64,000 nucleotides of DNA from Trichoplax adhaerens (Eukaryota; Animalia; Placozoa). Shown piece after piece: positions 1 through 13,300 of the stretch. The stretch spans positions 2,167,836 to 2,231,835 of the forward strand of contig NW_002060949.1 of assembly GCF_000150275.1 (NCBI RefSeq), read 5' to 3'. Position 1 is the first letter of the stretch, and every line of letters begins with the position of its first letter. The notes under the pieces were generated by a model. The model worked only from the letters and a program-made list of their open reading frames with translations. It searched no databases and was not told the DNA's origin. Made by a program: the position numbers and the translations under genes.

Positions 1-270
1 ACCACGTAGTGACGTTAATATTCTGTATATCTACATTTCAGCTAGGTCTAGAATGCTACAATTCATTTTTATCATATATTACAATGTAGAAGTATACAGG
101 TATCAAACTTTATAAACATGGAAATTAAAACACAGAAGGGTACTTCGACTAAATATTAGCGATCTACTCTATTACTGCAAACATTAGTGTCGTAAATACT
201 ATATATTGAACGTATATGAGATGAAAAGTTGACCAAAAGCGCGAGTCATAGTGCCCAAGAATTGATAATA

Positions 271-347
271 TAAACTACAGTAGTCATCGGTTATACATTT
301 TGCCAATATCAAATGGATTTCAAATGTACAACTTCATTGGTAGTTTA
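271..347 (-). promoter_or_regulatory. SECIS element (form 2) in the 3' UTR of the PRXL2C-like gene
   Basis: Minus strand reads TAAACTAC-ca-ATGAA-GTTGTACATTT-gAAAtCCAtttgatatTGGca-AAATGTATAAC-CGAT-gactact-GTAGTTTA. It has an 8-bp helix I, an AUGA (337-334) / GA (288-287) core, an 11-bp helix II with one G-U pair, unpaired AAA and a CCA/TGG apical ministem. It begins about 80 nt after the TAA stop. Confidence 0.92.
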
Positions 348-426
348 TCATTAACAACACATGAGCGTCCGCTTTAGGCAACAATAATCAAGTGCTGTAA
401 GAGCAGTAAACTCAGTCTTTGATCGA

Positions 427-3400
427 TTAATGTTTTTTAAATTCAACATTTGCTACATCGGCCATACTGAGTAATTTGTTAATTGGGGTGTGATCAAATG
501 TACCGCCATCAATATGGAGGTATTTCAAAACATTACCTGAAATAGTAGAAAGATCCGCATCATGAACATAGCAATTTGTCAATTTTACTCTAAGATGATA
601 CATGATCGATACTATAGCTCACAATTAAAATTACGGTGGCATAGTTACGAACAATTGTTGAAAGAATTAATACAAATTCAACCTACCAGGTCCAACTATA
701 AGTTGTCCACCTTGCTGCTTAACATCACCTTGAGAACTCATTGATTTCATAGTTCGCCATAACGAATTTGCTAAGCCTGATGCAACAGATGATCTGACAT
801 GTTCTGATCCTATTGTCAAGATCAATTTCTTATTCGTCTATTTTATAACCCATATCTATGCTATTAGGCTACTTAAGGTTTACTGGCTATCAATTGATGG
901 TTCACTTTGGTATTTTATTACCTGATGCTCCAGTAGAGAGAGTTCTTATCATGCCTAGTTTGGAATAGACGGTCGTCTGTGGATCGCTGTACATATCATG
1001 CTGATAGCCAGTTACCTTACGAAAGTTCTAGTTATTGTAGAAAAAATACGTGATAGCTTATCAAATTTGAGCCGTTCGTGAACAATTTGTACAAATTGAG
1101 TTACAGTATTACAAGAGCATAAGTTTAGAGGTGTTATTGATCAATCACCTTGATGAAAGTGTGTTTGGCACATCCAATCACAGCAAGTCGAACGTTGGCT
1201 TTCTATAGTAATGATAATATAATCTTTAGAGAAGCGAAGTTTGTTGCAATGTTCATAGGTAGCACAAGGCTTTCATTGGAACAGTAGCTCATGGTATGGA
1301 TGAGGAAGAAGCAACTGTTTTACGTTCCCCACGCTGATTAGTACACACAATACCAATTTACAAGCAATCTTTCGATCAATTGGTGGATAGTATTATCAAA
1401 AACACTTTCGATCTATTTCATGATAATCTACTTGTATCATTCATTTGTGATAAATGTGTTTGTTAGTTAACTAATGACTAGGATAGTTAATCATTTTCTC
1501 TTATGCAACACTATGATGGTTTATACTTGTAAACACTAAAGTGTTGTATTCATTTAATTATTAGAATACAGGACTCGCGTAATAGACTAGAAGCAAATTT
1601 TGTACCTATCAAATATAGAATTTCAGTCGATACATAATCGTAAGAATAAATCAAAAATATTCTAATCAAGTATTTACACTCTATTGCCAATAACTGGATT
1701 ATGCAATATTAGTTTTACTAACCGCTAAAGATTCTTGCGGTATTTTAGCCAAATCTATTAATAAAAAAGAAGAAATAAAAATGTGATTTTAAATACCAAG
1801 AGAACATTGCAGTGCATTTATGAATACAGTCTTTGCAATCACGTATAATAACTGTTATTGTTGAATACGAGTGTACTGTATATGTTTCTTCGACGACGTA
1901 AAAAATACAATGATTTCTATGCAGTCATTGTTTATCATTGATGAAAATTAATTTAAAATTTAATGCTGTAAGAATTGATATTTTTTTAAAGACAAATTAA
2001 AGTTAACTAGGGGAACAAATGTGACGTTCCTTTTCTTATGATAAAGAATTTAAAAAAATGAATTAAGAAGAAGAAAAAATAATACGAATATACGTTCAAC
2101 TGTCAATGAGATCAATCAACAGCTAGATTTCACATTAATGAAATGCTGGTATAATGGATAATTAATGATCGTGATTAGTACTGTGTAACATAATTTATAA
2201 AACGTTTGCTAAGTTGGGACGATTGTACCATCAGAATATAATTTGAATTAGTACTCATTGTTGTATAAATTAATTAAGCAACGTATCTCACAAAAAGTGA
2301 TGACTAGACGCCTTATGAAGTTGAAAATGTATGTTTGTGAATGCATCAAGGCGTAATGTGAAAACATCGCAGCAATTACTATTGAGTAGAGACTAGAAAA
2401 TGATTCATAATCAGAAAAACAATGATTCCTCTATTTTTATATCATTTCAAGATTTACCTTCGACATATTCTTTGCATATGTATCAGAGGAAATGCTATCC
2501 ATGTTTTTTCATAGATATAGTCAAAAAGAAGTATATAGTTATAAAAGAAATTTTCAATCCAAAGTTCTGACATGTACAAAATTACATACAACCAAATGAA
2601 TACTTCAAGTTATTATATTATACTACAATATCTTTCCCATTTATCTTGCAGTACGTATTACAATTAGTTCCATTAACATTGATGTATTTGGTTTGTCGTT
2701 GGTTACATTACTGTACAGCACTTGAAAGGAAAGTGCTAAGAATTTAGGAATAGTACAACGAGATAACTACTGTATATTCTTAAAGTTGTTTGTGCCTGAG
2801 GATATCCCGGTAGTGGTTAACCCTAACTGTTGATGGAATTCTTTCTAGGTATCCTCCATGCTTATAAGGTTTCATTATACTGTACCGCAATATTATTATT
2901 TTATTAATGTACCGTAGAATATAGTGTACGTTGTATGATCGGTCTCTAGGTCAATAAGACTATCAAGGAAAAATATCGTAATTTTGCAGTGAAGAATTTT
3001 GAAAACCACAAGCACTCGTTCAACAATTATAATTCTTTATTAAGCGCCAACATGCTGCTGCACAGTATGCATAGTCCTGTTTTAACGATGAATGAATCAA
3101 TCAATACCGTGCACGCCTGCCGTTCTAACCCATGCCTAAAAGTGTATAATAATAAGCTTATGTACACGTAATACTGTACAGTGTACATGATATGCCTATT
3201 GGGTAGTAAAAGTATTCTTATTTTGGACTGGAAATGGCGATGTTGTCGATGGATGGGCGTATAGTCATGCAATAATGATCAGCAAATGCATCGTTGTCTT
3301 GTAAAGAAAACAAAGCCGCTTTGTGCTTAATCATCCATCTCTTTTTCACATGATTTACTACGCATACCTACGATATACAGTCCTAATTATTAATATTAAA

Positions 3401-3639
3401 TTACTAGTTTATACTCAAAGAGGCTAAAAACGGCACTACTAATAGAAGGGTGGAAGTTGATCTCGGAATAAACTTACACGAACAAAAACGATGATCGTTT
3501 TTTGATTCTTGTAAAGATCTCCAAAGTTGAGGGTAGCGCCATTTTCGTCAAATACTTGCAATCCATCCAGATCAGACCATTGCAATTCCTTCTCGCTCAT
3601 GACATCGGTAGCTATCTGATTGGTGTCGACATCGGCCAT
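427..3639 (-). CDS. PRXL2C: Peroxiredoxin-like 2C / AAED1 (AhpC-TSA_2, thioredoxin fold) selenoprotein, 207 aa, Sec58 in a UxxC motif
   Basis: Seven GT-AG exons splice in phase: 3478-3639, 2458-2494, 1723-1754, 1149-1202, 922-1027, 687-809, 427-536 (624 nt). Translation: ...LYKNQKTIIVFVR|HFL(TGA)YICKEYVE|DLAKIPQESLA|KANVRLAVIGCAKHTFIK|NFRKVTGYQHDMYSDPQ...QGDVKQQGGQLIVGP|GNVLKYLHIDGGTFDHTPINKLL...*. This matches vertebrate AAED1 (HFLCYICKEYVEDLAKIP, QGDPAQQGG, DHKPIN). TGA at 2483-2485 replaces the first Cys. Confidence 0.93.
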
Positions 3640-4656
3640 TGCTGAAAATAGCTCAAACTGAGCCCAGTTCGATGTATTCGACTTGAAATAATTTCAATTT
3701 ATCGATTGGATCGCTAACGCTTTACCCAATCGATGTCGTCAAAATAATTTCTTACGCCGGTAGCGGGGCGAGATCTTCAAATGATGAAAACTTTGCCAGT
3801 ATCGCTCAATATGCTAGGTCTTGTATGACAGGGTAGTGTCCAATATAGTAGCCCATGTGTATAGAGTACTGTAACAGGCCATTGCCATTGGCGTGCAAAT
3901 GTATGGCTGTGTGGATGTCCAAATTAGTGTCACTCTCAATGGTAACGTCATCTCCATTTTCTTACCGCAATGGATGTTGGGATCATGATGGAGGTCAATC
4001 GAGGTGACCTCTGTACAGAAGTAGGCTACAATACAGTACACTGCTGTACTGTACACTGTAGACTGTACACTGTGTAGACGTCCTACTGCAGATTGATCTT
4101 GAGTTCTTTCATGTTAGTTAGGGATGTTATTGGTCTTCTTTTCTGGGAGTAATCATGCTCTGTTCACTACTGTACTGACAGGGACTACTGACAGGAAACG
4201 ACCACAGCGTAAAATCAATGTGCAAGCTTATCATTTTTTTATACCATGCTGCACAAAACCAAGCTAGCAGGCTAATAGCAGCTAATTTAGACGTCAATCG
4301 CAGACAGTATCGTGTACCATTATAGATGTGCGATACACTTGAAATAACCAGTGAAAGAATCAGCCTGTTAATCCCTGTTATTACACTCCCTCACAAAATG
4401 ATCCCTTGCGCATGCCCCGTGGAAGTCAATGGATTTTGCCGGGTGTAATTAAAAGCCTAGCTAGCATTTAAATTGACACTTCTGCCAAATTACAGAAGAG
4501 CGAAATCTGGACGTGATACAGTGGTTTTCAAGTAAACGGTTATAGAACAAGTTCAACGTCTTGAAAATGAAAGACGTGATACAGTTTTCAAGTTTACATG
4601 GTTTTCAACGTTACTTTTCAAGCGTCAATTTGATAGCTATGCTTTAATCATACCTA

Positions 4657-6898: not shown

Positions 6899-9800
6899 TT
6901 ACACATAACTATCCGATTCATCATCTGAATCGGTATCATTAAAAGATGGAATTGTTGCAGCTTTTCCATCCTTCTCTTTTTCAACTGTTTGCGTGAACGG
7001 TACTTTTCCCTTATCCATATATTCACTCCATACTTGTAATATTCTCTCTAAAATGATAATATGCTGTCTAAAATCTTGCGTTAATGATTGCAATGGAATA
7101 GACCTATTTACTGACTTTGAATCAATACCATTGGTAGTATCTTTACTAGAACACATTAAAACTGGGCCAAAACAGATAGCCAAATTATGAAAACTCATTT
7201 TATTACTATCCTCGAACTTTCCAACACGAACTAAATGGTCCAAGATGAATGATAATGTTGAACGATTTGGTTCAGGTAATGAGTTCATTAAGTTTAAGAT
7301 AGTCGCGTCGCAATCTTTACTCTCTAAAATACATGGATTATCAAATAAAGTAGGATACAATTCATTGGTTAACAACGGCTCTGGTAATTCGCGTAAGTAA
7401 TCTTTCAAGACACCAGTCAAAACATTAATATCTGGATATCGTTCAATATCAGCTAAATTGACCGACATGGCATTAAATTCAAATTCTGTACGTAAAGTTT
7501 GCTTCCTTTTAGCTGATCCACATAAGCGGTATAAGCCAACAGTATCCATGCCACGCTCTTCAATAGCAGCTATACATTTTTGAACAATTTGAGGTACTTG
7601 ATTACCTTCACGTTGTGTTACCGCTGCTAAATCAACACCAAAAACTCCAGCAGTTCGTGCTGATGGGCGCCGCTGGAACGTTGATTCTTGTCCAACGAAA
7701 TTAAATTTAGCATAGATGACACCGAAAGGCTTAGTATGTAATGCCAATTGATGATTAGGACCATAAGTATGGATCAATTTAGCAAAGTTCACATTGCCGC
7801 TTACAAACAAGGATTTATTATGCAATCTTGTACTTTTACTATTGCCAACAAAGCACTTAAATGAGACATATTGACAACAATCTAAATCAATCTCGAACGA
7901 TTCATCCCATTCGAATAGAGTGGTGCCACGCTTACTATTAGTTTTAGCTTGAATTTCACCATCTACTTCAATAATGCAATAGACATCACGTTGTTTGCAA
8001 TTATTATTATTACCATTATCACTTGATGTCATATCTTTACCACATAACAGATTGACACTTAAACGACCTGATAATAAGGCTTCTTTACCATCCACTGATG
8101 GAGGGCTAACCCTTAATTCTTTGGCTTCACTAAAATGAGCAATAAAATCATGATCTAATTCATATTGTGTATAACTTGGACAGCGTTGCGATTTCTTATT
8201 ACTTGAGGTTGTATTGCTATTACCAGACATGCCCAGCATACCAGAGACATCCAATATTTGCTTACGTTGCGAGGATTTCGGGCTAGCAAACAACTTCTTT
8301 TTACTATATGTCGATTTTGTCTTTGTCGATGATGGCATATTATCGGATGGCATACTGGATGCTTGGGCTGCAACTAATCCCATGCCAACAATAGCTGAGA
8401 GCGATTTAGAACGATTACGTTTATTTGAGAACTTTTTCTTCCCTTTACCATTTAATACTGGTGTACCTACTGGTGGAGGGACACCTAGCAAATCAGTTGT
8501 ATTTTTAAATCGAAATCTTTTCTTCTCCTTTTTCGCTAGATTAGCACGAGCTATACCAGGCGTTAATGTCATTTTTTTGGTATCTAAGACAGGCTTATCA
8601 TTTTGACTATTGGGTATTTCATCATCGTCAGCGCTATAAGACCGTTCTCGTTGATCCGAAGATGGAGGATTTTCGATACTCATCGTTAAAGGAGATGGTA
8701 CGCCAATAGGTGACGGGCTTGAGCGATTAGATGGTGGTGTTTCTAATACAGGTGTTGATGCTCCTGAATCAGTACAATCGCTATCGATAGCGATGATAGG
8801 TAATGTAAGCTGTTTACGGATATTCAATTGCAATGACATTTTTTGAGCCAAGCTATTGGCCATTTTGCTGGAGTCATCTTCGTCTGAACTAATCGAAGTA
8901 TCTGGCCGCACTGAATCATCTGAACTTTGTATTGAACTATTATCAGCTTCAGATTGCGACGAAATAGTCATAACAATATCGTCATGATCGCGTTCTGATG
9001 TTGATTCTGAGTTTTGTCGAATAACTTGTTGATCCGGTAATGTAGCAGCTGGTAGTATTGGCGATGAATGGCGGCGATCTTCATTACATGGTAGCGATAA
9101 TAGCGAGTGAGCAATATTCTTGTCGGCTTGATTGATATCATCACCATGTCGACGTTGACTATCCGACTGACGGCTTCTCCAGGTTCGATTACTTTTTGGT
9201 GATGGTATAGAATCTTGTTGAGTATCTGAATCTTCATGATTGGAATTAGGATAAGAATCGGAATTATAATTATAATTTTCACTGGTTGAATCGTAGGATT
9301 CGGTAGCTGAAAAATACGAACTATCGTTCCCTGTTTGATAAAAGCGAGTGTTAACAGGTGAGATCATTGGAGTACGATTACTAGAATGATTTGTGCCACC
9401 ATAATCGATGATGGAACCTTCATTTAATATTTCTAGCGATGATGGTATACCTTTTCTAGATACAGGGAATTGATCAGAGCTTCGCCGATTATTTTTTGTA
9501 CGCGATGGAGCCAAGAGTTGGTTTGTTGTTGAACGATGATTGGACATGGATTGATGAGAATTATTATGACTTGATAGAAATGGTTGCTGAGGATCAGAAT
9601 GCCGATGTCGTTGTTGACGTGGATAATGATTATGATTGCTACCACTGTGATCTAATCCTTTCGATGATGATAATAATTGTTGCTGTTGATGATAACTTGT
9701 GTAGCGATTTGTTTCTAAATGCTGTGGGCGATTGATAAATTCAGTAGGCGAATTACGACATGATGTTGAAACTCGTCGTTTTAGTGTCAAGGATAATTTA

Positions 9801-10366
9801 GTTGGATTACGTAGTAAAACAACGACATCATCTAATGTCATGTCAGCAACACTGACATTATTAACATTGAGTAATTCATCGCCAATTTGAACTAAATTGT
9901 TCACATCGACAACACTACCTAGAGCAATTCTAGATACAAAGATTCCATCCAAACGATCGAATCCATCGCCATTACGGATATAAAAACCAATGGATACACC
10001 GGGTGTTTTCATTAATTCTACCCTACTAATACTATATGCTCCACTCTCATCGCGGATATGAGTAACCGACGTAATGTTATATGAATGCTCAGCGGCGCTT
10101 TCTTGGCCATTTTCATGCAATCCTGGATCCGCATGATGAAGTCGATTGATACTGTCATCGCTAATATCACTTGCACGTCTTTGCATAAATTTCTTAGCAA
10201 TATTTTTCTTGATCAGTTGACTATATTGCTTTTTAATACCGTTGCTTTTGCGAGGATTAGAAGGGCTATTAACTAAATTAGGATTGTCTTGCGGCCATAT
10301 TGCTTGATTATCATAAGTGTAGCCAGCTGGCACCGATTGTTGATTGACAAACTGTTTATCAGACAT
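6899..10366 (-). CDS. SYD1: Syd-1 / RhoGAP100F / SYDE-family Rho GTPase-activating protein (PDZ - low complexity - C2 - RhoGAP), 1155 aa, single coding exon
   Basis: PDZ (PGVSIGFYIRNGDGFDRLDGIFVSRIALGSVVDVNNLVQIGDELLNVNNV), C2 (LSGRLSVNLLCGKDM...DVYCIIEVDG...FEWDESFEIDL), RhoGAP (VFGVDL...VPQIVQKCIAAIEERGMDTVGLYRLCGS...LKDYLRELPEPLLT...NKMSFHNLAICFGPVL). An in-frame upstream TGA supports this ATG. Confidence 0.92.
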   Translation of the reverse strand: MSDKQFVNQQSVPAGYTYDNQAIWPQDNPNLVNSPSNPRKSNGIKKQYSQLIKKNIAKKFMQRRASDISDDSINRLHHADPGLHENGQESAAEHSYNITSVTHIRDESGAYSISRVELMKTPGVSIGFYIRNGDGFDRLDGIFVSRIALGSVVDVNNLVQIGDELLNVNNVSVADMTLDDVVVLLRNPTKLSLTLKRRVSTSCRNSPTEFINRPQHLETNRYTSYHQQQQLLSSSKGLDHSGSNHNHYPRQQRHRHSDPQQPFLSSHNNSHQSMSNHRSTTNQLLAPSRTKNNRRSSDQFPVSRKGIPSSLEILNEGSIIDYGGTNHSSNRTPMISPVNTRFYQTGNDSSYFSATESYDSTSENYNYNSDSYPNSNHEDSDTQQDSIPSPKSNRTWRSRQSDSQRRHGDDINQADKNIAHSLLSLPCNEDRRHSSPILPAATLPDQQVIRQNSESTSERDHDDIVMTISSQSEADNSSIQSSDDSVRPDTSISSDEDDSSKMANSLAQKMSLQLNIRKQLTLPIIAIDSDCTDSGASTPVLETPPSNRSSPSPIGVPSPLTMSIENPPSSDQRERSYSADDDEIPNSQNDKPVLDTKKMTLTPGIARANLAKKEKKRFRFKNTTDLLGVPPPVGTPVLNGKGKKKFSNKRNRSKSLSAIVGMGLVAAQASSMPSDNMPSSTKTKSTYSKKKLFASPKSSQRKQILDVSGMLGMSGNSNTTSSNKKSQRCPSYTQYELDHDFIAHFSEAKELRVSPPSVDGKEALLSGRLSVNLLCGKDMTSSDNGNNNNCKQRDVYCIIEVDGEIQAKTNSKRGTTLFEWDESFEIDLDCCQYVSFKCFVGNSKSTRLHNKSLFVSGNVNFAKLIHTYGPNHQLALHTKPFGVIYAKFNFVGQESTFQRRPSARTAGVFGVDLAAVTQREGNQVPQIVQKCIAAIEERGMDTVGLYRLCGSAKRKQTLRTEFEFNAMSVNLADIERYPDINVLTGVLKDYLRELPEPLLTNELYPTLFDNPCILESKDCDATILNLMNSLPEPNRSTLSFILDHLVRVGKFEDSNKMSFHNLAICFGPVLMCSSKDTTNGIDSKSVNRSIPLQSLTQDFRQHIIILERILQVWSEYMDKGKVPFTQTVEKEKDGKAATIPSFNDTDSDDESDSYV

Positions 10367-13300
10367 GATGTGATTTCGATTCAGTCTGCCTTCCTGACGA
10401 GTACTATTCTTAGCGATAGCCGATGATTGAGAGGATATAGTGGATATTCTATCTATCCAACTCTCCGGTCACTCAAATCATTGCTTGAAATGAATCACTT
10501 GCTTTATATTTTTGCGGGGTTGAGCTTTTTGACTTGTATTCTGAATATAGATAAATAAATCAATGGATCGATTAAATAAAGTCCGCTAACAACCTCAATA
10601 ATATAGATTGAGTTACGTAAATTAAATATCATGGAGTGCTATTTATTCTACTAAAAGCTCGTGATCATAAATCGTTGTAATAAAAAATATTCTGGTATAT
10701 GTATGTAATGTAATTGAGTAAGAAAAAATTGGTATAAAATGAATTAAAAATCTCAGATTCTGTTATTATGTGAAAATCTATCTTTATCTTAAACGAATGC
10801 GAAACTCATATCGAAATTATTTCTTATTACATCTCTGCTTCGCTAAAATACTATTTTCGTAGAATTGAAAATAAAGCGAAAACATCAAGCCTTTATCATA
10901 AGACAGCAATGTAATTGAAAAAAGGTTTACTATTATTTCTATCTGTTCCGGTAGAACTTCACAAAGAAATAGGCCTTCAATGTTGGATAACGTCGGGAAG
11001 ATGATGAACAAGATGGAATTTATTAAAAGTAGACAGTGAGGTTCTTTGACGTTATATCAACATAACTGTATGTCGATTAAATTAGAATCTATAAATGAAC
11101 TCGATACGAACGGAATAATTAACCTATAAGACAACAAGAAACTAGTAAGGAAGTTTTCAATCTTAATTAAATGTTCAGCACAGAATGGACCTATGAATAA
11201 ATGCTGATAATAACGAAACGGAAATTAACCTTATTTTGTGTATAGTACGATCGCATAATTCTCGACGTACGCGTATTCTCTATTAATTAAATCCTCATCA
11301 TACGTAAAATATAAAGCATTGAAGAAAATGAACGGAAATTAAGTCCAAGTAAATGAGCTGTATATGAAGTAATTTTAATCAAAGTTTCCATGACATACTG
11401 TCTGTATAGGATATAGAATTATTGTTTATAAAGATTGAAGTAAAAATAGATGCATTAATTTTAATTAGGTAGCTAGACATTATTTTCAAATAATGTTACA
11501 TTACCCATTGTGCCATGGAGTACTAGTAGCACCTGGATTAAGATGTAGCCGAATTATAAAAGTATAGTTGTTTTAATTCCATGGGTTTAAATTAAACTAT
11601 TCAAAGCTATTTACTAGTTAAAGAATCTAATTATAAATATCCTATTCAGGTTGAAATCGTTTTACTTACAAGAGTATTAGCACTAGAGATCCTAGAGTCT
11701 CTAATTATCTTTCTTTTTAGCAATTTATGCCCTAGTTTAGGCATAGTCATAGCATTGTAGTGTAAATGGTGACAGAAAAACTTCCTAAACTAAAAAGGAC
11801 TCCTGATCACTATCCTAATGTTTAGCCTATTCTATCGAAGCCAACCAAATTAATAACAGCTGTAGTGTAATTAAAGCAATTCACTGTACACCATTACCTA
11901 GATTTTATTCAGTATTCAACTTTTTTTTTCCTATTATTCTCTCATTAAATGAAATGAAACAGACTCTGATCTAGATTTTTTAATCCAACTTCTACGGTAC
12001 TAGACGTTATCACAGGACTATTCATCATATTTAAGATATACTAATTTTACGTATAGGACATAATCTAAGCTAGCGGGAACCATGACCATCAATGATCAAT
12101 GAGAAATTAAGAAAGAAAATCTCATCAATACTAAACACCCGTAATTCATAAATTTTTGACCTTTATGAAGTCGCATTTTTAATCTGAATTGCCTCGATAA
12201 TTTATGAGACCATATGCCCTTTAATTGATCTATCATTTCAAGATTGACTAGAAATGATTACAAGAAACGGGTATATTCATCTATCCTTTTTTCCCTTTAA
12301 TTGCGCTATCACTGTCAAGATTATTACAGATACTAACTTGAAAATTCTCCATCGAAAATCTTTAAATTTTGACGCAAAGAGTTATCACACTCCTTTACTA
12401 TGTTTGCACTAAAACTATAAGATTGCAGTCACATCACAATGAAGAATACACCAGCAGCTTTTTAAATTATATTAAAGTTATTTTTTAGACTGCCTTTAGT
12501 GAATTGTATAGCTTGACAGGATAAGCTCTGTACGGAGAAATAACTCAATTAGATTTTTGCTAGCGACAGCGACACTAATTAATGGCTAACAGCAATAATA
12601 ACGAGTCTGTATGAAACCTAAAAGCCAGAAAGTTAAAAAAATTGTTATTTTAATCTTTCCTAAATAGTACAATGACTATAGAGTCAATGGAGGATTTTCG
12701 CTAATGACGACTAATTATTTCTTTCTATTACTTGAAGTAAAGTTTGTCAATAAATGACTTGTATTTGAAGAAGGGCAAATTAAAGTCATAAAATCATAAA
12801 ACATCTATTTTAGAGTTATAGTAGCAAAAATATGCGAATTAGCAGCGTTGGAGATGAATTACTGTAGTACAGTCGGAATTAAACAAAAGCTCTTAACCGC
12901 ATTTATTTTATGACATAAAAATGGGGTGTTAACTATTTCATGAGTCATAAAATTCTTCAGCCAATAGATAGTAAGTGAGAATATTCAAATTGAACTCAAC
13001 CTACTCACTAATAGGCTAAGATAATATCCGATAGCAGCGATCGAAAGGGAAATTTACTATCATCATGACTTAACAGAATAGTATCATGTGATAGGCACCA
13101 TCTTGGTGAAGCTCAATCCTAGGATACTATCAATTTTTACCGGAATTGTCAAGTATTTAACTGTAATTAACTACAGACTATTGCTAATTGTATTGATAGA
13201 ATGTGCTATATTGTACATTCTATTTATATCGATGAAATTCACATTATAAAATGGTAACACAAACCCGATCGATATGGCTACTTTGCAGCATTTTCTCAAA

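What the first reader, a model, noticed from the sequence alone, without database searches (positions are those of the whole stretch)
271..3639. Hidden selenoprotein: PRXL2C/AAED1 homolog with in-frame UGA in a UxxC redox motif plus a SECIS
Seen: the 37-nt exon 2458-2494 encodes H-F-L-TGA-Y-I-C-K-E-Y-V-E, five further exons stay in frame and conserved to the normal C-terminus, and the 3' UTR holds a complete SECIS. Known: vertebrate PRXL2C/AAED1 has CxxC here (HFLCYICKEY) and is not a selenoprotein; Sec typically replaces the first Cys of thioredoxin-fold CxxC motifs. Inference: UGA is recoded as selenocysteine (Sec58 of 207 aa), so the AAED1 lineage may have been Sec-containing early in animals and converted to Cys later. 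Standard gene callers would truncate or skip this exon. AhpC-like selenoproteins have been predicted computationally in some invertebrates, so the family may not be new, but this locus is likely mis-annotated and uncharacterised.
Basis: partly seen in the sequence, partly recalled or inferred. Interest (0 to 1): 0.92.

Follow-up and report, generated by a model that had tools for sequence, protein, structure and literature searches.

The report
Known Trichoplax selenoprotein SelU2/PRXL2C gene
This is a real, expressed selenocysteine-containing PRXL2C/AAED1 (SelenoU2) gene, almost certainly of the placozoan Trichoplax, but the gene and its evolutionary reading were published in 2012, so only the public gene models need correcting.

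Summary
A seven-exon minus-strand gene (3639..427, all introns GT-AG, 207 codons) has TGA as codon 58 in an H-F-L-U-Y-I-C-K box. A form-2 SECIS hairpin starts 78 nt after the stop.

Contigs from RNA runs show all six splice joints, include the TGA exon, and show no variant at the TGA. A tandem paralogue 5 kb downstream, just outside the window, keeps the TGA, all splice sites and the SECIS. Its dN/dS is 0.32 and one SECIS pair has changed on both sides.

The same codon is TGA in Trichoplax sp. H2, Salpingoeca rosetta and three metagenome contigs. It is Cys in named PRXL2C/AAED1 proteins. The genome has tRNA-Sec and SepSecS.

It is not new. Jiang et al. 2012 (PMC3473315) list Ta.SelU2_a and Ta.SelU2_b on the minus strand of scaffold_7, where SelU2 means C9orf21-like, i.e. 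PRXL2C. They already infer an early Sec-to-Cys change. Mariotti et al. 2013 (PMC3753652) describe UxxC 'AhpC' selenoproteins in choanoflagellates and basal metazoans.

What remains useful is that two public models are wrong. The Trichoplax sp. H2 model skips exons 2-3, and the S. rosetta model hides the TGA in a false intron. The scan has noted other selenoprotein genes elsewhere in this genome.

The parts
3478..3639 (-). Exon 1: ATG at 3639, codons 1-54, ending ...IIVFVR; donor GTAAGT
   Evidence: joint 2494/3478 in run X4; aligns to named PRXL2C proteins
2458..2494 (-). Exon 2 (37 nt): H-F-L-U-Y-I-C-K-E-Y-V-E plus the first base of codon 67
   Evidence: joints 1754/2458 (X8) and 2494/3478 (X4); Cys of PRXL2C relatives aligns to the TGA
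2483..2485 (-). In-frame TGA, codon 58, read as selenocysteine; Cys61 is the likely resolving residue
   Evidence: No variant listed here in four runs that cover it. TGA at the same codon in the tandem paralogue, Trichoplax sp. H2, S. rosetta and three metagenome contigs
1723..1754 (-). Exon 3 (32 nt): (D)LAKIPQESLA
   Evidence: joints 1202/1723 and 1754/2458
1149..1202 (-). Exon 4 (54 nt): KANVRLAVIGCAKHTFIK
   Evidence: joints 1027/1149 and 1202/1723
922..1027 (-). Exon 5 (106 nt)
   Evidence: Pfam AhpC-TSA_2 PF13911, E 2.8e-4, 21.7 bits for this exon alone; joints 809/922 and 1027/1149
687..809 (-). Exon 6 (123 nt), with the conserved QGDVKQQGG..VGPG block
   Evidence: phmmer of this exon finds AAED1/PRXL2C relatives; joints 536/687 and 809/922
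427..536 (-). Exon 7 coding part, TAA stop at 429-427
   Evidence: joint 536/687
270..348 (-). SECIS element, form 2. AUGA at 337-334, helix II 5' arm 332-322, unpaired AAA at 320-318, mini-stem 316-314/305-303, GA at 288-287. It starts 78 nt after the stop, and the core is 89 nt after it.
   Evidence: fold; own pattern scan, 1 hit in the window and 0 in shuffles; 87% identical to the paralogue's hairpin against 62-64% for the flanking UTR, with one AU-to-GC double change; inside spliced RNA contigs that run past 250

Best explanation
This is the Sec-containing PRXL2C (AAED1, C9orf21, SelU2/SELENOU2) gene of a Trichoplax genome. It is one of a tandem pair already published as Ta.SelU2_a and Ta.SelU2_b. 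The mRNA carries UGA as codon 58. I infer that the 3' UTR SECIS recruits SBP2 and eEFSec with Sec-tRNA(Sec), so the ribosome inserts selenocysteine and goes on to make a 207-residue thioredoxin-fold protein. Sec58 would sit at the start of the helix after the first core strand, with Cys61 as resolving partner (U-x-x-C). That would make it a selenol/thiol oxidoreductase of the Prx-like-2 type. Shown here: the gene structure, splicing, transcription through the TGA exon and the SECIS, purifying selection, conservation of the TGA, and the presence of tRNA-Sec and SepSecS. Inferred: actual Sec insertion, the catalytic role and the substrate.
For: Structure and reading frame: all seven exons are GT-AG and total 624 nt. 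RNA contigs from two studies show all six joints. Spliced contigs have depth 48-282 against 6-20 for intron contigs, and none shows a variant at 2483-2485. A DNA-like run from a third study agrees at the TGA.

Paralogue: the tandem copy keeps the TGA, every splice site and the SECIS. dS is 0.55 and dN/dS 0.32. The SECIS is an island of conservation with one compensatory pair.

Other species: TGA sits at the same codon in Trichoplax sp. H2, S. rosetta PTSG_04672 and three metagenome contigs.

Family: named AAED1/PRXL2C proteins align in order to every exon, with Cys opposite the TGA.

Machinery: tRNA-Sec scores 78 bits and ARAGORN calls it SeC with anticodon tca. A SepSecS gene is present.

Literature: PMC3473315, PMC3753652, and PMC13134290, which equates SELENOU2 with PRXL2C.

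Fold: a model of the Cys homologue P0013 puts CxxC at the strand-to-helix turn. Its best structural match is human prostamide/PGF synthase, PRXL2B.
Against: No Rfam SECIS model matches the hairpin. The same model also reaches its cut-off nowhere in the 105-Mb genome, which has 28 published selenoproteins, so this says little. Only exon 5 gives a Pfam hit, and it is below the cut-off, because exons had to be searched singly. All reads evidence comes from assembled contigs, which hide rare isoforms and cannot measure read-through. No protein-level evidence for selenium was available. I found no SECIS in the S. rosetta or metagenome homologues.
Confidence: 0.93

Rival explanations
1. Pseudogene: a PRXL2C copy inactivated by a Cys-to-stop (TGY-to-TGA) mutation.
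For: A single in-frame TGA at a Cys codon is what such a mutation would give. The Rfam SECIS models are silent.
Against: The TGA is shared by a paralogue that has diverged to dS 0.55 while keeping dN/dS 0.32 and all splice sites. It is also shared with a choanoflagellate and with metagenomic homologues. The mRNA is spliced and abundant. A conserved SECIS follows both copies.
Confidence: 0.02
2. Assembly or sequencing error: the true codon is TGC or TGT.
For: Nothing beyond the prior that single-base errors occur.
Against: Four runs from three studies cover the site with no variant listed. The independent Trichoplax sp. H2 assembly has TGA. The paralogue has TGA.
Confidence: 0.01
3. The functional product avoids the UGA: exons 2 and 3 (69 nt, in frame) are skipped, as in the 184-aa public model, and the hairpin is incidental.
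For: Skipping both exons keeps the frame, and a public annotation uses that form.
Against: No 1202-to-3478 joint appears. The joints seen are 1202/1723, 1754/2458 and 2494/3478. Skipping would delete the whole conserved RHFL-U/C-xxC-KEYVEDLAKIP active-site segment, which is 92-100% identical between the paralogues. Contigs can hide a rare isoform, so a minor skipped form is not excluded.
Confidence: 0.03

Closest known systems
Ta.SelU2_a / Ta.SelU2_b of Trichoplax adhaerens (Jiang et al. 2012, BMC Genomics 13:446, PMC3473315)
   Same: Same scaffold and strand: the window is contig C1408, which is scaffold_7 if contigs are numbered in reverse, a rule that also fits the paper's GPx_a, GPx_b and SelU1. 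Same family (C9orf21-like = AAED1 = PRXL2C), same Sec form, and two copies. The own-genome PF13911 search finds exactly two such loci on that contig, both on the minus strand.
   Different: Nothing biological. The paper's coordinates are in figures that are not held as text, so identity rests on scaffold, strand, family and copy number. Added here: RNA joints, dN/dS, SECIS covariation and the wrong public models.
Eukaryotic 'AhpC' selenoproteins (Mariotti et al. 2013, NAR 41:e149, PMC3753652)
   Same: Thioredoxin-like protein with Sec in a UXXC box that is CXXC in vertebrates. Reported in choanoflagellates, protists and basal metazoans. The S. rosetta homologue found here has H-F-L-U-F-Y-C at the same codon.
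   Different: That paper does not name Trichoplax in its main text, and its supplement is not held. That its 'AhpC' family equals PRXL2C/SelU2 is my inference.
Vertebrate and invertebrate PRXL2C / AAED1 (Cys forms)
   Same: Collinear over all seven exons. Shares the RHFL-x-xx-CK(E/D)YVEDLA signature and the QGD..QQGG..GPG block.
   Different: Cys replaces Sec in Priapulus, Patella, Pinctada and Lineus. Eight of 14 relatives sampled have Asp there, seven of them without the second Cys either. No SECIS is expected in any of these.
Human prostamide/prostaglandin F synthase, PRXL2B (PDB 9us9, 9usa)
   Same: Nearest solved structure to the Cys homologue, by sequence (E 0.0035) and by fold (Foldseek E 1.4e-10). 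It is a CxxC Prx-like-2 oxidoreductase.
   Different: A different SELENOU subfamily (SELENOU3), about 18% identity, and its substrate is not known to be shared.

Membership tests
Eukaryotic selenoprotein gene (UGA-Sec plus SECIS) | In-frame UGA aligned with Cys, or with UGA, of homologues | tested here: met
   Cys of four named PRXL2C proteins aligns to the TGA. TGA at the same codon in five other loci.
Eukaryotic selenoprotein gene (UGA-Sec plus SECIS) | Coding conservation continues downstream of the UGA | tested here: met
   dN/dS is 0.32 over all exons against the paralogue. Exons 3-7 align to PRXL2C proteins.
Eukaryotic selenoprotein gene (UGA-Sec plus SECIS) | 3' UTR stem-loop with an AUGA...GA quartet, a helix II of about 11 bp and unpaired AA | tested here: met
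   Fold. Own pattern scan is unique in 64 kb with 0 hits in 40 shuffles. A relaxed version finds like hairpins 3' of GPx_a and SelU1 in the same genome. One compensatory pair against the paralogue.
Eukaryotic selenoprotein gene (UGA-Sec plus SECIS) | Match to a curated SECIS covariance model (Rfam RF00031) | tested here: inconclusive
   No hit at E up to 10. The model also finds nothing over its cut-off in the whole genome, so it is insensitive here.
Eukaryotic selenoprotein gene (UGA-Sec plus SECIS) | Sec machinery present in the genome | tested here: met
   tRNA-Sec at 78.1 bits, ARAGORN SeC (tca). Multi-exon SepSecS gene.
Eukaryotic selenoprotein gene (UGA-Sec plus SECIS) | Mature transcript contains both the UGA exon and the SECIS | tested here: met
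   All six joints are seen, and spliced contigs run through 250-533 and beyond.
Eukaryotic selenoprotein gene (UGA-Sec plus SECIS) | Selenium actually incorporated at the UGA | not testable with these tools
   Needs 75Se labelling or mass spectrometry.
PRXL2C / AAED1 / SELENOU2 | Collinear similarity to named PRXL2C proteins, including the RHFL-[C/U]-xx-C-K-[ED]-YVEDLA signature | tested here: met
   The Trichoplax sp. H2 orthologue is named 'Thioredoxin-like protein AAED1'.
PRXL2C / AAED1 / SELENOU2 | Pfam AhpC-TSA_2 (PF13911) domain over the curated cut-off | tested here: inconclusive
   Exon 5 alone scores 21.7 bits against a cut-off of 27, and other exons give nothing. The joined protein was not searched, by rule. 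The H2 model and relatives carry PF13911.
PRXL2C / AAED1 / SELENOU2 | Thioredoxin fold with the redox box at the N-terminus of the first core helix | tested here: inconclusive
   Shown only for the Cys homologue P0013: strand 76-81, C87xxC90, helix 88-98, core pLDDT 85-95. Best matches are PRXL2B, ResA and Bcp/PrxQ. This protein itself was not folded.
Typical AhpC/Prx1 2-Cys peroxiredoxin | Peroxidatic Cys in a PxxxTxxC motif, with a distant resolving Cys | tested here: not met
   The sequence shows V-R-H-F-L-U-Y-I-C, a CxxC-type box with no PxxxT. 'AhpC-like' is a name for the fold, not membership of AhpC proper.

The most novel reading that the evidence does not exclude
Three published labels describe one orthologous group: the 'AhpC' selenoproteins of choanoflagellates and protists (2013), 'SelU2' of Trichoplax (2012) and PRXL2C/SELENOU2. 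That group was Sec-containing in the common ancestor of choanoflagellates and animals. It then went Sec-to-Cys in most animals, and further to Asp, losing the redox box, in many molluscs. A 2026 vertebrate-centred study states that all Sec genes it detected in the SELENOU family lie on the SELENOU1 branch, so the Sec form of SELENOU2 seems to have dropped out of view.
Probability: 0.55. Interest if true: 0.3.

Novelty: already known. Interest (0 to 1): 0.15.

Why it matters
The gene is a clean, fully supported example of UGA recoding in an early-branching animal. It shows that PRXL2C, a poorly understood human redox protein, descends from a selenoenzyme. That point and the gene itself are already in the literature. 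The practical value is in annotation. The Trichoplax sp. H2 model RDD47937.1 lacks the active site because it skips exons 2-3. The Salpingoeca rosetta model XP_004994762.1 removes the Sec box as a false intron. Anyone using these models for PRXL2C evolution or structure would be misled.

Tried and rejected
- Rfam cmscan on 1-4500 and on 230-430 gave no SECIS hit, only weak snoRNA noise. RF00031 over the whole genome had a best score of 32.5 bits, below its cut-off of 35, and that hit lies elsewhere. I therefore treat the Rfam negative as uninformative.
- Pfam on exons 1, 6 and 7 gave nothing. Exon 4 is too short to submit.
- PF10262 (Rdx) in the own genome gave no match, so it could not serve as a SECIS control.
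- The SECIS search in the S. rosetta locus and the metagenome contigs found nothing, with my strict and relaxed scripts and with Rfam. L016 and L017 end at or near the stop. Sec use in those homologues therefore rests on the conserved TGA and reading frame only.
- A paper search for 'AAED1' plus 'selenoprotein' gave 0 papers. The older names SelU2 and C9orf21 were the key.
- Pseudogene, assembly error and exon skipping are each rejected under the rival explanations.
All searches were exon by exon, by reference. dN/dS was counted per exon and the counts summed.
- Whole-protein Pfam scoring, a phylogeny against PRXL2A and PRXL2B, and a structure of this protein itself were therefore left out.
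Full report
**Observation**

The gene lies on the minus strand. Translating 200-3700 and locating splice sites gives seven exons: 3639-3478, 2494-2458, 1754-1723, 1202-1149, 1027-922, 809-687 and 536-427. Every exon has an AG acceptor and a GT donor. They total 624 nt, which is 207 codons plus TAA.

Exon 2 reads H-F-L-TGA-Y-I-C-K-E-Y-V-E. The TGA is at 2485-2483 and is codon 58.

**The hairpin**

The minus strand of 348-270 folds as a form-2 SECIS:
- a 9-bp helix I;
- an internal loop carrying AUGA (337-334) on the 5' side and GA (288-287) on the 3' side;
- an 11-bp helix II;
- unpaired AAA (320-318);
- a 3-bp mini-stem.

Its MFE is -18.6 kcal/mol, z = -2.97, and no shuffle out of 200 folds as well. 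The hairpin starts 78 nt after the stop. In the spliced mRNA the core lies about 540 nt after the UGA.

A SECIS-pattern script of my own finds this one site in the 64 kb on both strands and none in 40 Markov shuffles. Its thresholds were set after I had seen the hairpin. A relaxed version gives 2 hits in the window against 1.4 expected. That relaxed version also finds hairpins of the same build about 320-340 nt downstream of two other published selenoprotein genes of this genome, GPx_a and SelU1.

Rfam's SECIS model does not match the hairpin. It also reaches its cut-off nowhere in the whole genome. The negative therefore says nothing.

**Genome and Sec machinery**

The assembly has 105.6 Mb in 1414 contigs, and the window is C1408:2167836-2231835. 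It has:
- a tRNA-Sec scoring 78.1 bits, which ARAGORN calls SeC with anticodon tca;
- a multi-exon SepSecS gene;
- two GPx genes with in-frame TGA.

Size, contig count and gene positions fit Trichoplax adhaerens. Numbering contigs in reverse gives C1408 = scaffold_7. The same rule puts GPx_a on scaffold_4, GPx_b on scaffold_9 and SelU1 on scaffold_8. Strands agree too, and all of this matches Table S1 of Jiang et al. 2012.

**Expression**

Contigs of four public runs were laid on 250-3700. Joints match all six predicted introns, once the tool's stated cut offsets are applied: 536/687, 809/922, 1027/1149, 1202/1723, 1754/2458 and 2494/3478. All have CT..AC ends on the plus strand, which is GT..AG on the gene's strand.

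The runs behaved as follows:
- X8 and X9 are RNA by record. Their spliced contig has depth 282 and 267, against 6-20 for intron contigs.
- X4 shows the same spliced form.
- X1 covers exons and introns evenly and runs on into the neighbouring copy, so it behaves like DNA.

No run lists a variant at 2483-2485. No joint skips exons 2-3. Spliced contigs run through the SECIS and beyond position 250. These are assembled contigs, so rare isoforms and expression levels cannot be judged.

**Tandem paralogue**

An own-genome search with PF13911 found a second hit 5 kb away on the same strand. I fetched it as L012, where L012 position 9837 equals window position 1. It has the same seven exons with every splice site intact:
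- Exon 2 reads H-F-L-TGA-Y-V-C-K-E-Y-V-E.
- Its own SECIS lies at L012 4955-4905 on the minus strand.

Codon counts, taken exon by exon and summed, give dS 0.55, dN 0.18 and dN/dS 0.32.

The two SECIS elements are 87% identical. The UTR on either side is 62-64% identical and the introns 55-73%. Helix II carries one A-U to G-C double change and one G-C to G-U change.

Loose ends carry the paralogue's exon 1 and exon 2 sequence, so it is transcribed too.

**Relatives**

A phmmer search with exon 6 alone against 1.84 billion representatives gave 20 hits.
- P0001 is RDD47937.1, 'Thioredoxin-like protein AAED1 [Trichoplax sp. H2]', 184 aa. It joins exon 1 directly to exon 4, skipping the 69 nt of exons 2 and 3.
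- The H2 locus itself has the TGA exon and an identical SECIS.
- P0007 is Salpingoeca rosetta PTSG_04672. In the DNA the frame is unbroken and reads ...V-F-V-R-H-F-L-TGA-F-Y-C-K-Y-Y-I-E-D-L-A-K... The public model removes this stretch as an intron.
- Three metagenome contigs read H-F-L-TGA-Y-V-C-K-E-Y-V-D (two of them) and H-F-L-TGA-Y-A-C-K-E-Y-V-E, with the frame conserved after the TGA.
- P0013 is Priapulus 'thioredoxin-like protein AAED1'. Its relatives are named peroxiredoxin-like 2C.
- Four of these named proteins align in order to every exon here. Three place Cys opposite the TGA, and the Gigantopelta one has Asp there.

**Fold, by proxy**

A model of the natural Cys homologue P0013 has core pLDDT of 85-95 and places C87-x-x-C90 between strand 76-81 and helix 88-98.

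Its best solved matches are human prostamide/PGF synthase (PRXL2B), then ResA and Bcp/PrxQ peroxiredoxins. This supports a CxxC-type, Prx-like-2 oxidoreductase rather than a typical AhpC. The PxxxTxxC motif of AhpC is absent.

**Mechanism**

Shown: the mRNA contains a UGA inside a conserved redox box, and a conserved SECIS, in a genome with Sec machinery. The gene is under purifying selection on both sides of the UGA.

Inferred from established knowledge of eukaryotic Sec insertion: SBP2 binds the SECIS kink-turn and brings eEFSec with Sec-tRNA(Sec) to decode the UGA. Sec58 attacks the substrate, and Cys61 resolves the intermediate as a selenenylsulfide. The UGA is in exon 2 of 7, so failed recoding should expose the mRNA to nonsense-mediated decay, as in other selenoprotein genes. 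The substrate is unknown.

**What is already known**

Jiang et al. 2012 (PMC3473315) list Ta.SelU2_a and Ta.SelU2_b, both on the minus strand of scaffold_7. They define SelU2 as C9orf21-like. [quoted passage not shown]

Mariotti et al. 2013 (PMC3753652) describe 'AhpC' selenoproteins with a UXXC box in choanoflagellates, protists and basal metazoans, with CXXC in vertebrates.

A 2026 paper (PMC13134290) equates SELENOU2 with PRXL2C. It also says that all Sec genes it detected in the family belong to SELENOU1. That statement holds for its own vertebrate-centred data set.

**Verdict**

Interest is low. The residual value is the correction of two public gene models, and the likely identity of the 'AhpC' and 'SelU2' selenoprotein families.

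**Limits**

Whole-protein Pfam scoring, a tree against PRXL2A and PRXL2B, and a structure of this protein were therefore left out.

Noticed in passing
L012:5043-8668 (-), i.e. G000:C1408 about 2163042-2166667, just below window position 1: Tandem paralogue of the gene with the same seven exons, TGA in H-F-L-U-Y-V-C-K, and its own SECIS at L012 4955-4905. About 70% amino-acid identity and dN/dS 0.32. Presumably the other of Ta.SelU2_a/b.
   Followed up: yes
L019:3001-6213 (Trichoplax sp. H2, NOWV01000001.1) and L015:4001-4546 (Salpingoeca rosetta GL832964.1): Both public gene models are wrong at the Sec site. RDD47937.1 skips exons 2-3. XP_004994762.1 removes V-R-H-F-L-U-F-Y-C-K-Y-Y-I-E as a false intron from what is a single open frame with one TGA.
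   Followed up: yes
Alignment A3 (PRXL2C relatives P0013, P0021-P0033): Eight of 14 PRXL2C proteins, mostly molluscan, have Asp at the Sec/Cys position (H-F-L-D-F-I-A/T-K), and seven of these also lack the second Cys. The redox box seems to have been lost in these lineages.
   Followed up: partly
window 3367-3478 (-): Low-depth alternative joint in run X4: the exon 1 donor joined to an acceptor at 3367 inside intron 1, at depth 5.7 against 56 for the main joint. A minor isoform or noise.
   Followed up: no
window 6899-10366 (-): Single open frame of 1155 aa with PDZ, SYDE-type C2 and RhoGAP domains (RhoGAP E 9.6e-42). A SYDE-like Rho GTPase activator, apparently without introns over this stretch.
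   Followed up: partly
window 13027-13066 (-): Weak SECIS-like hairpin that passes only the relaxed pattern (7-bp helix II). About 1.4 such hits are expected by chance in 64 kb, so it is probably nothing.
   Followed up: no
L011 (G000:C1414:5973028-5973246, -) and L009 (G000:C1413:4362937-4363113, +): Two further weak AhpC-TSA_2 matches in the genome. L011 has E 0.67 and two TGAs inside. L009 has E 0.01 and an open 111-aa frame. Neither is in the 2012 list of Trichoplax SelU genes.
   Followed up: no
G000, whole genome: Rfam SECIS_1 (RF00031) reaches its gathering score nowhere in this 105-Mb genome, although 28 selenoprotein genes are published for it. The curated model is a poor SECIS detector for placozoan sequence.
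   Followed up: partly
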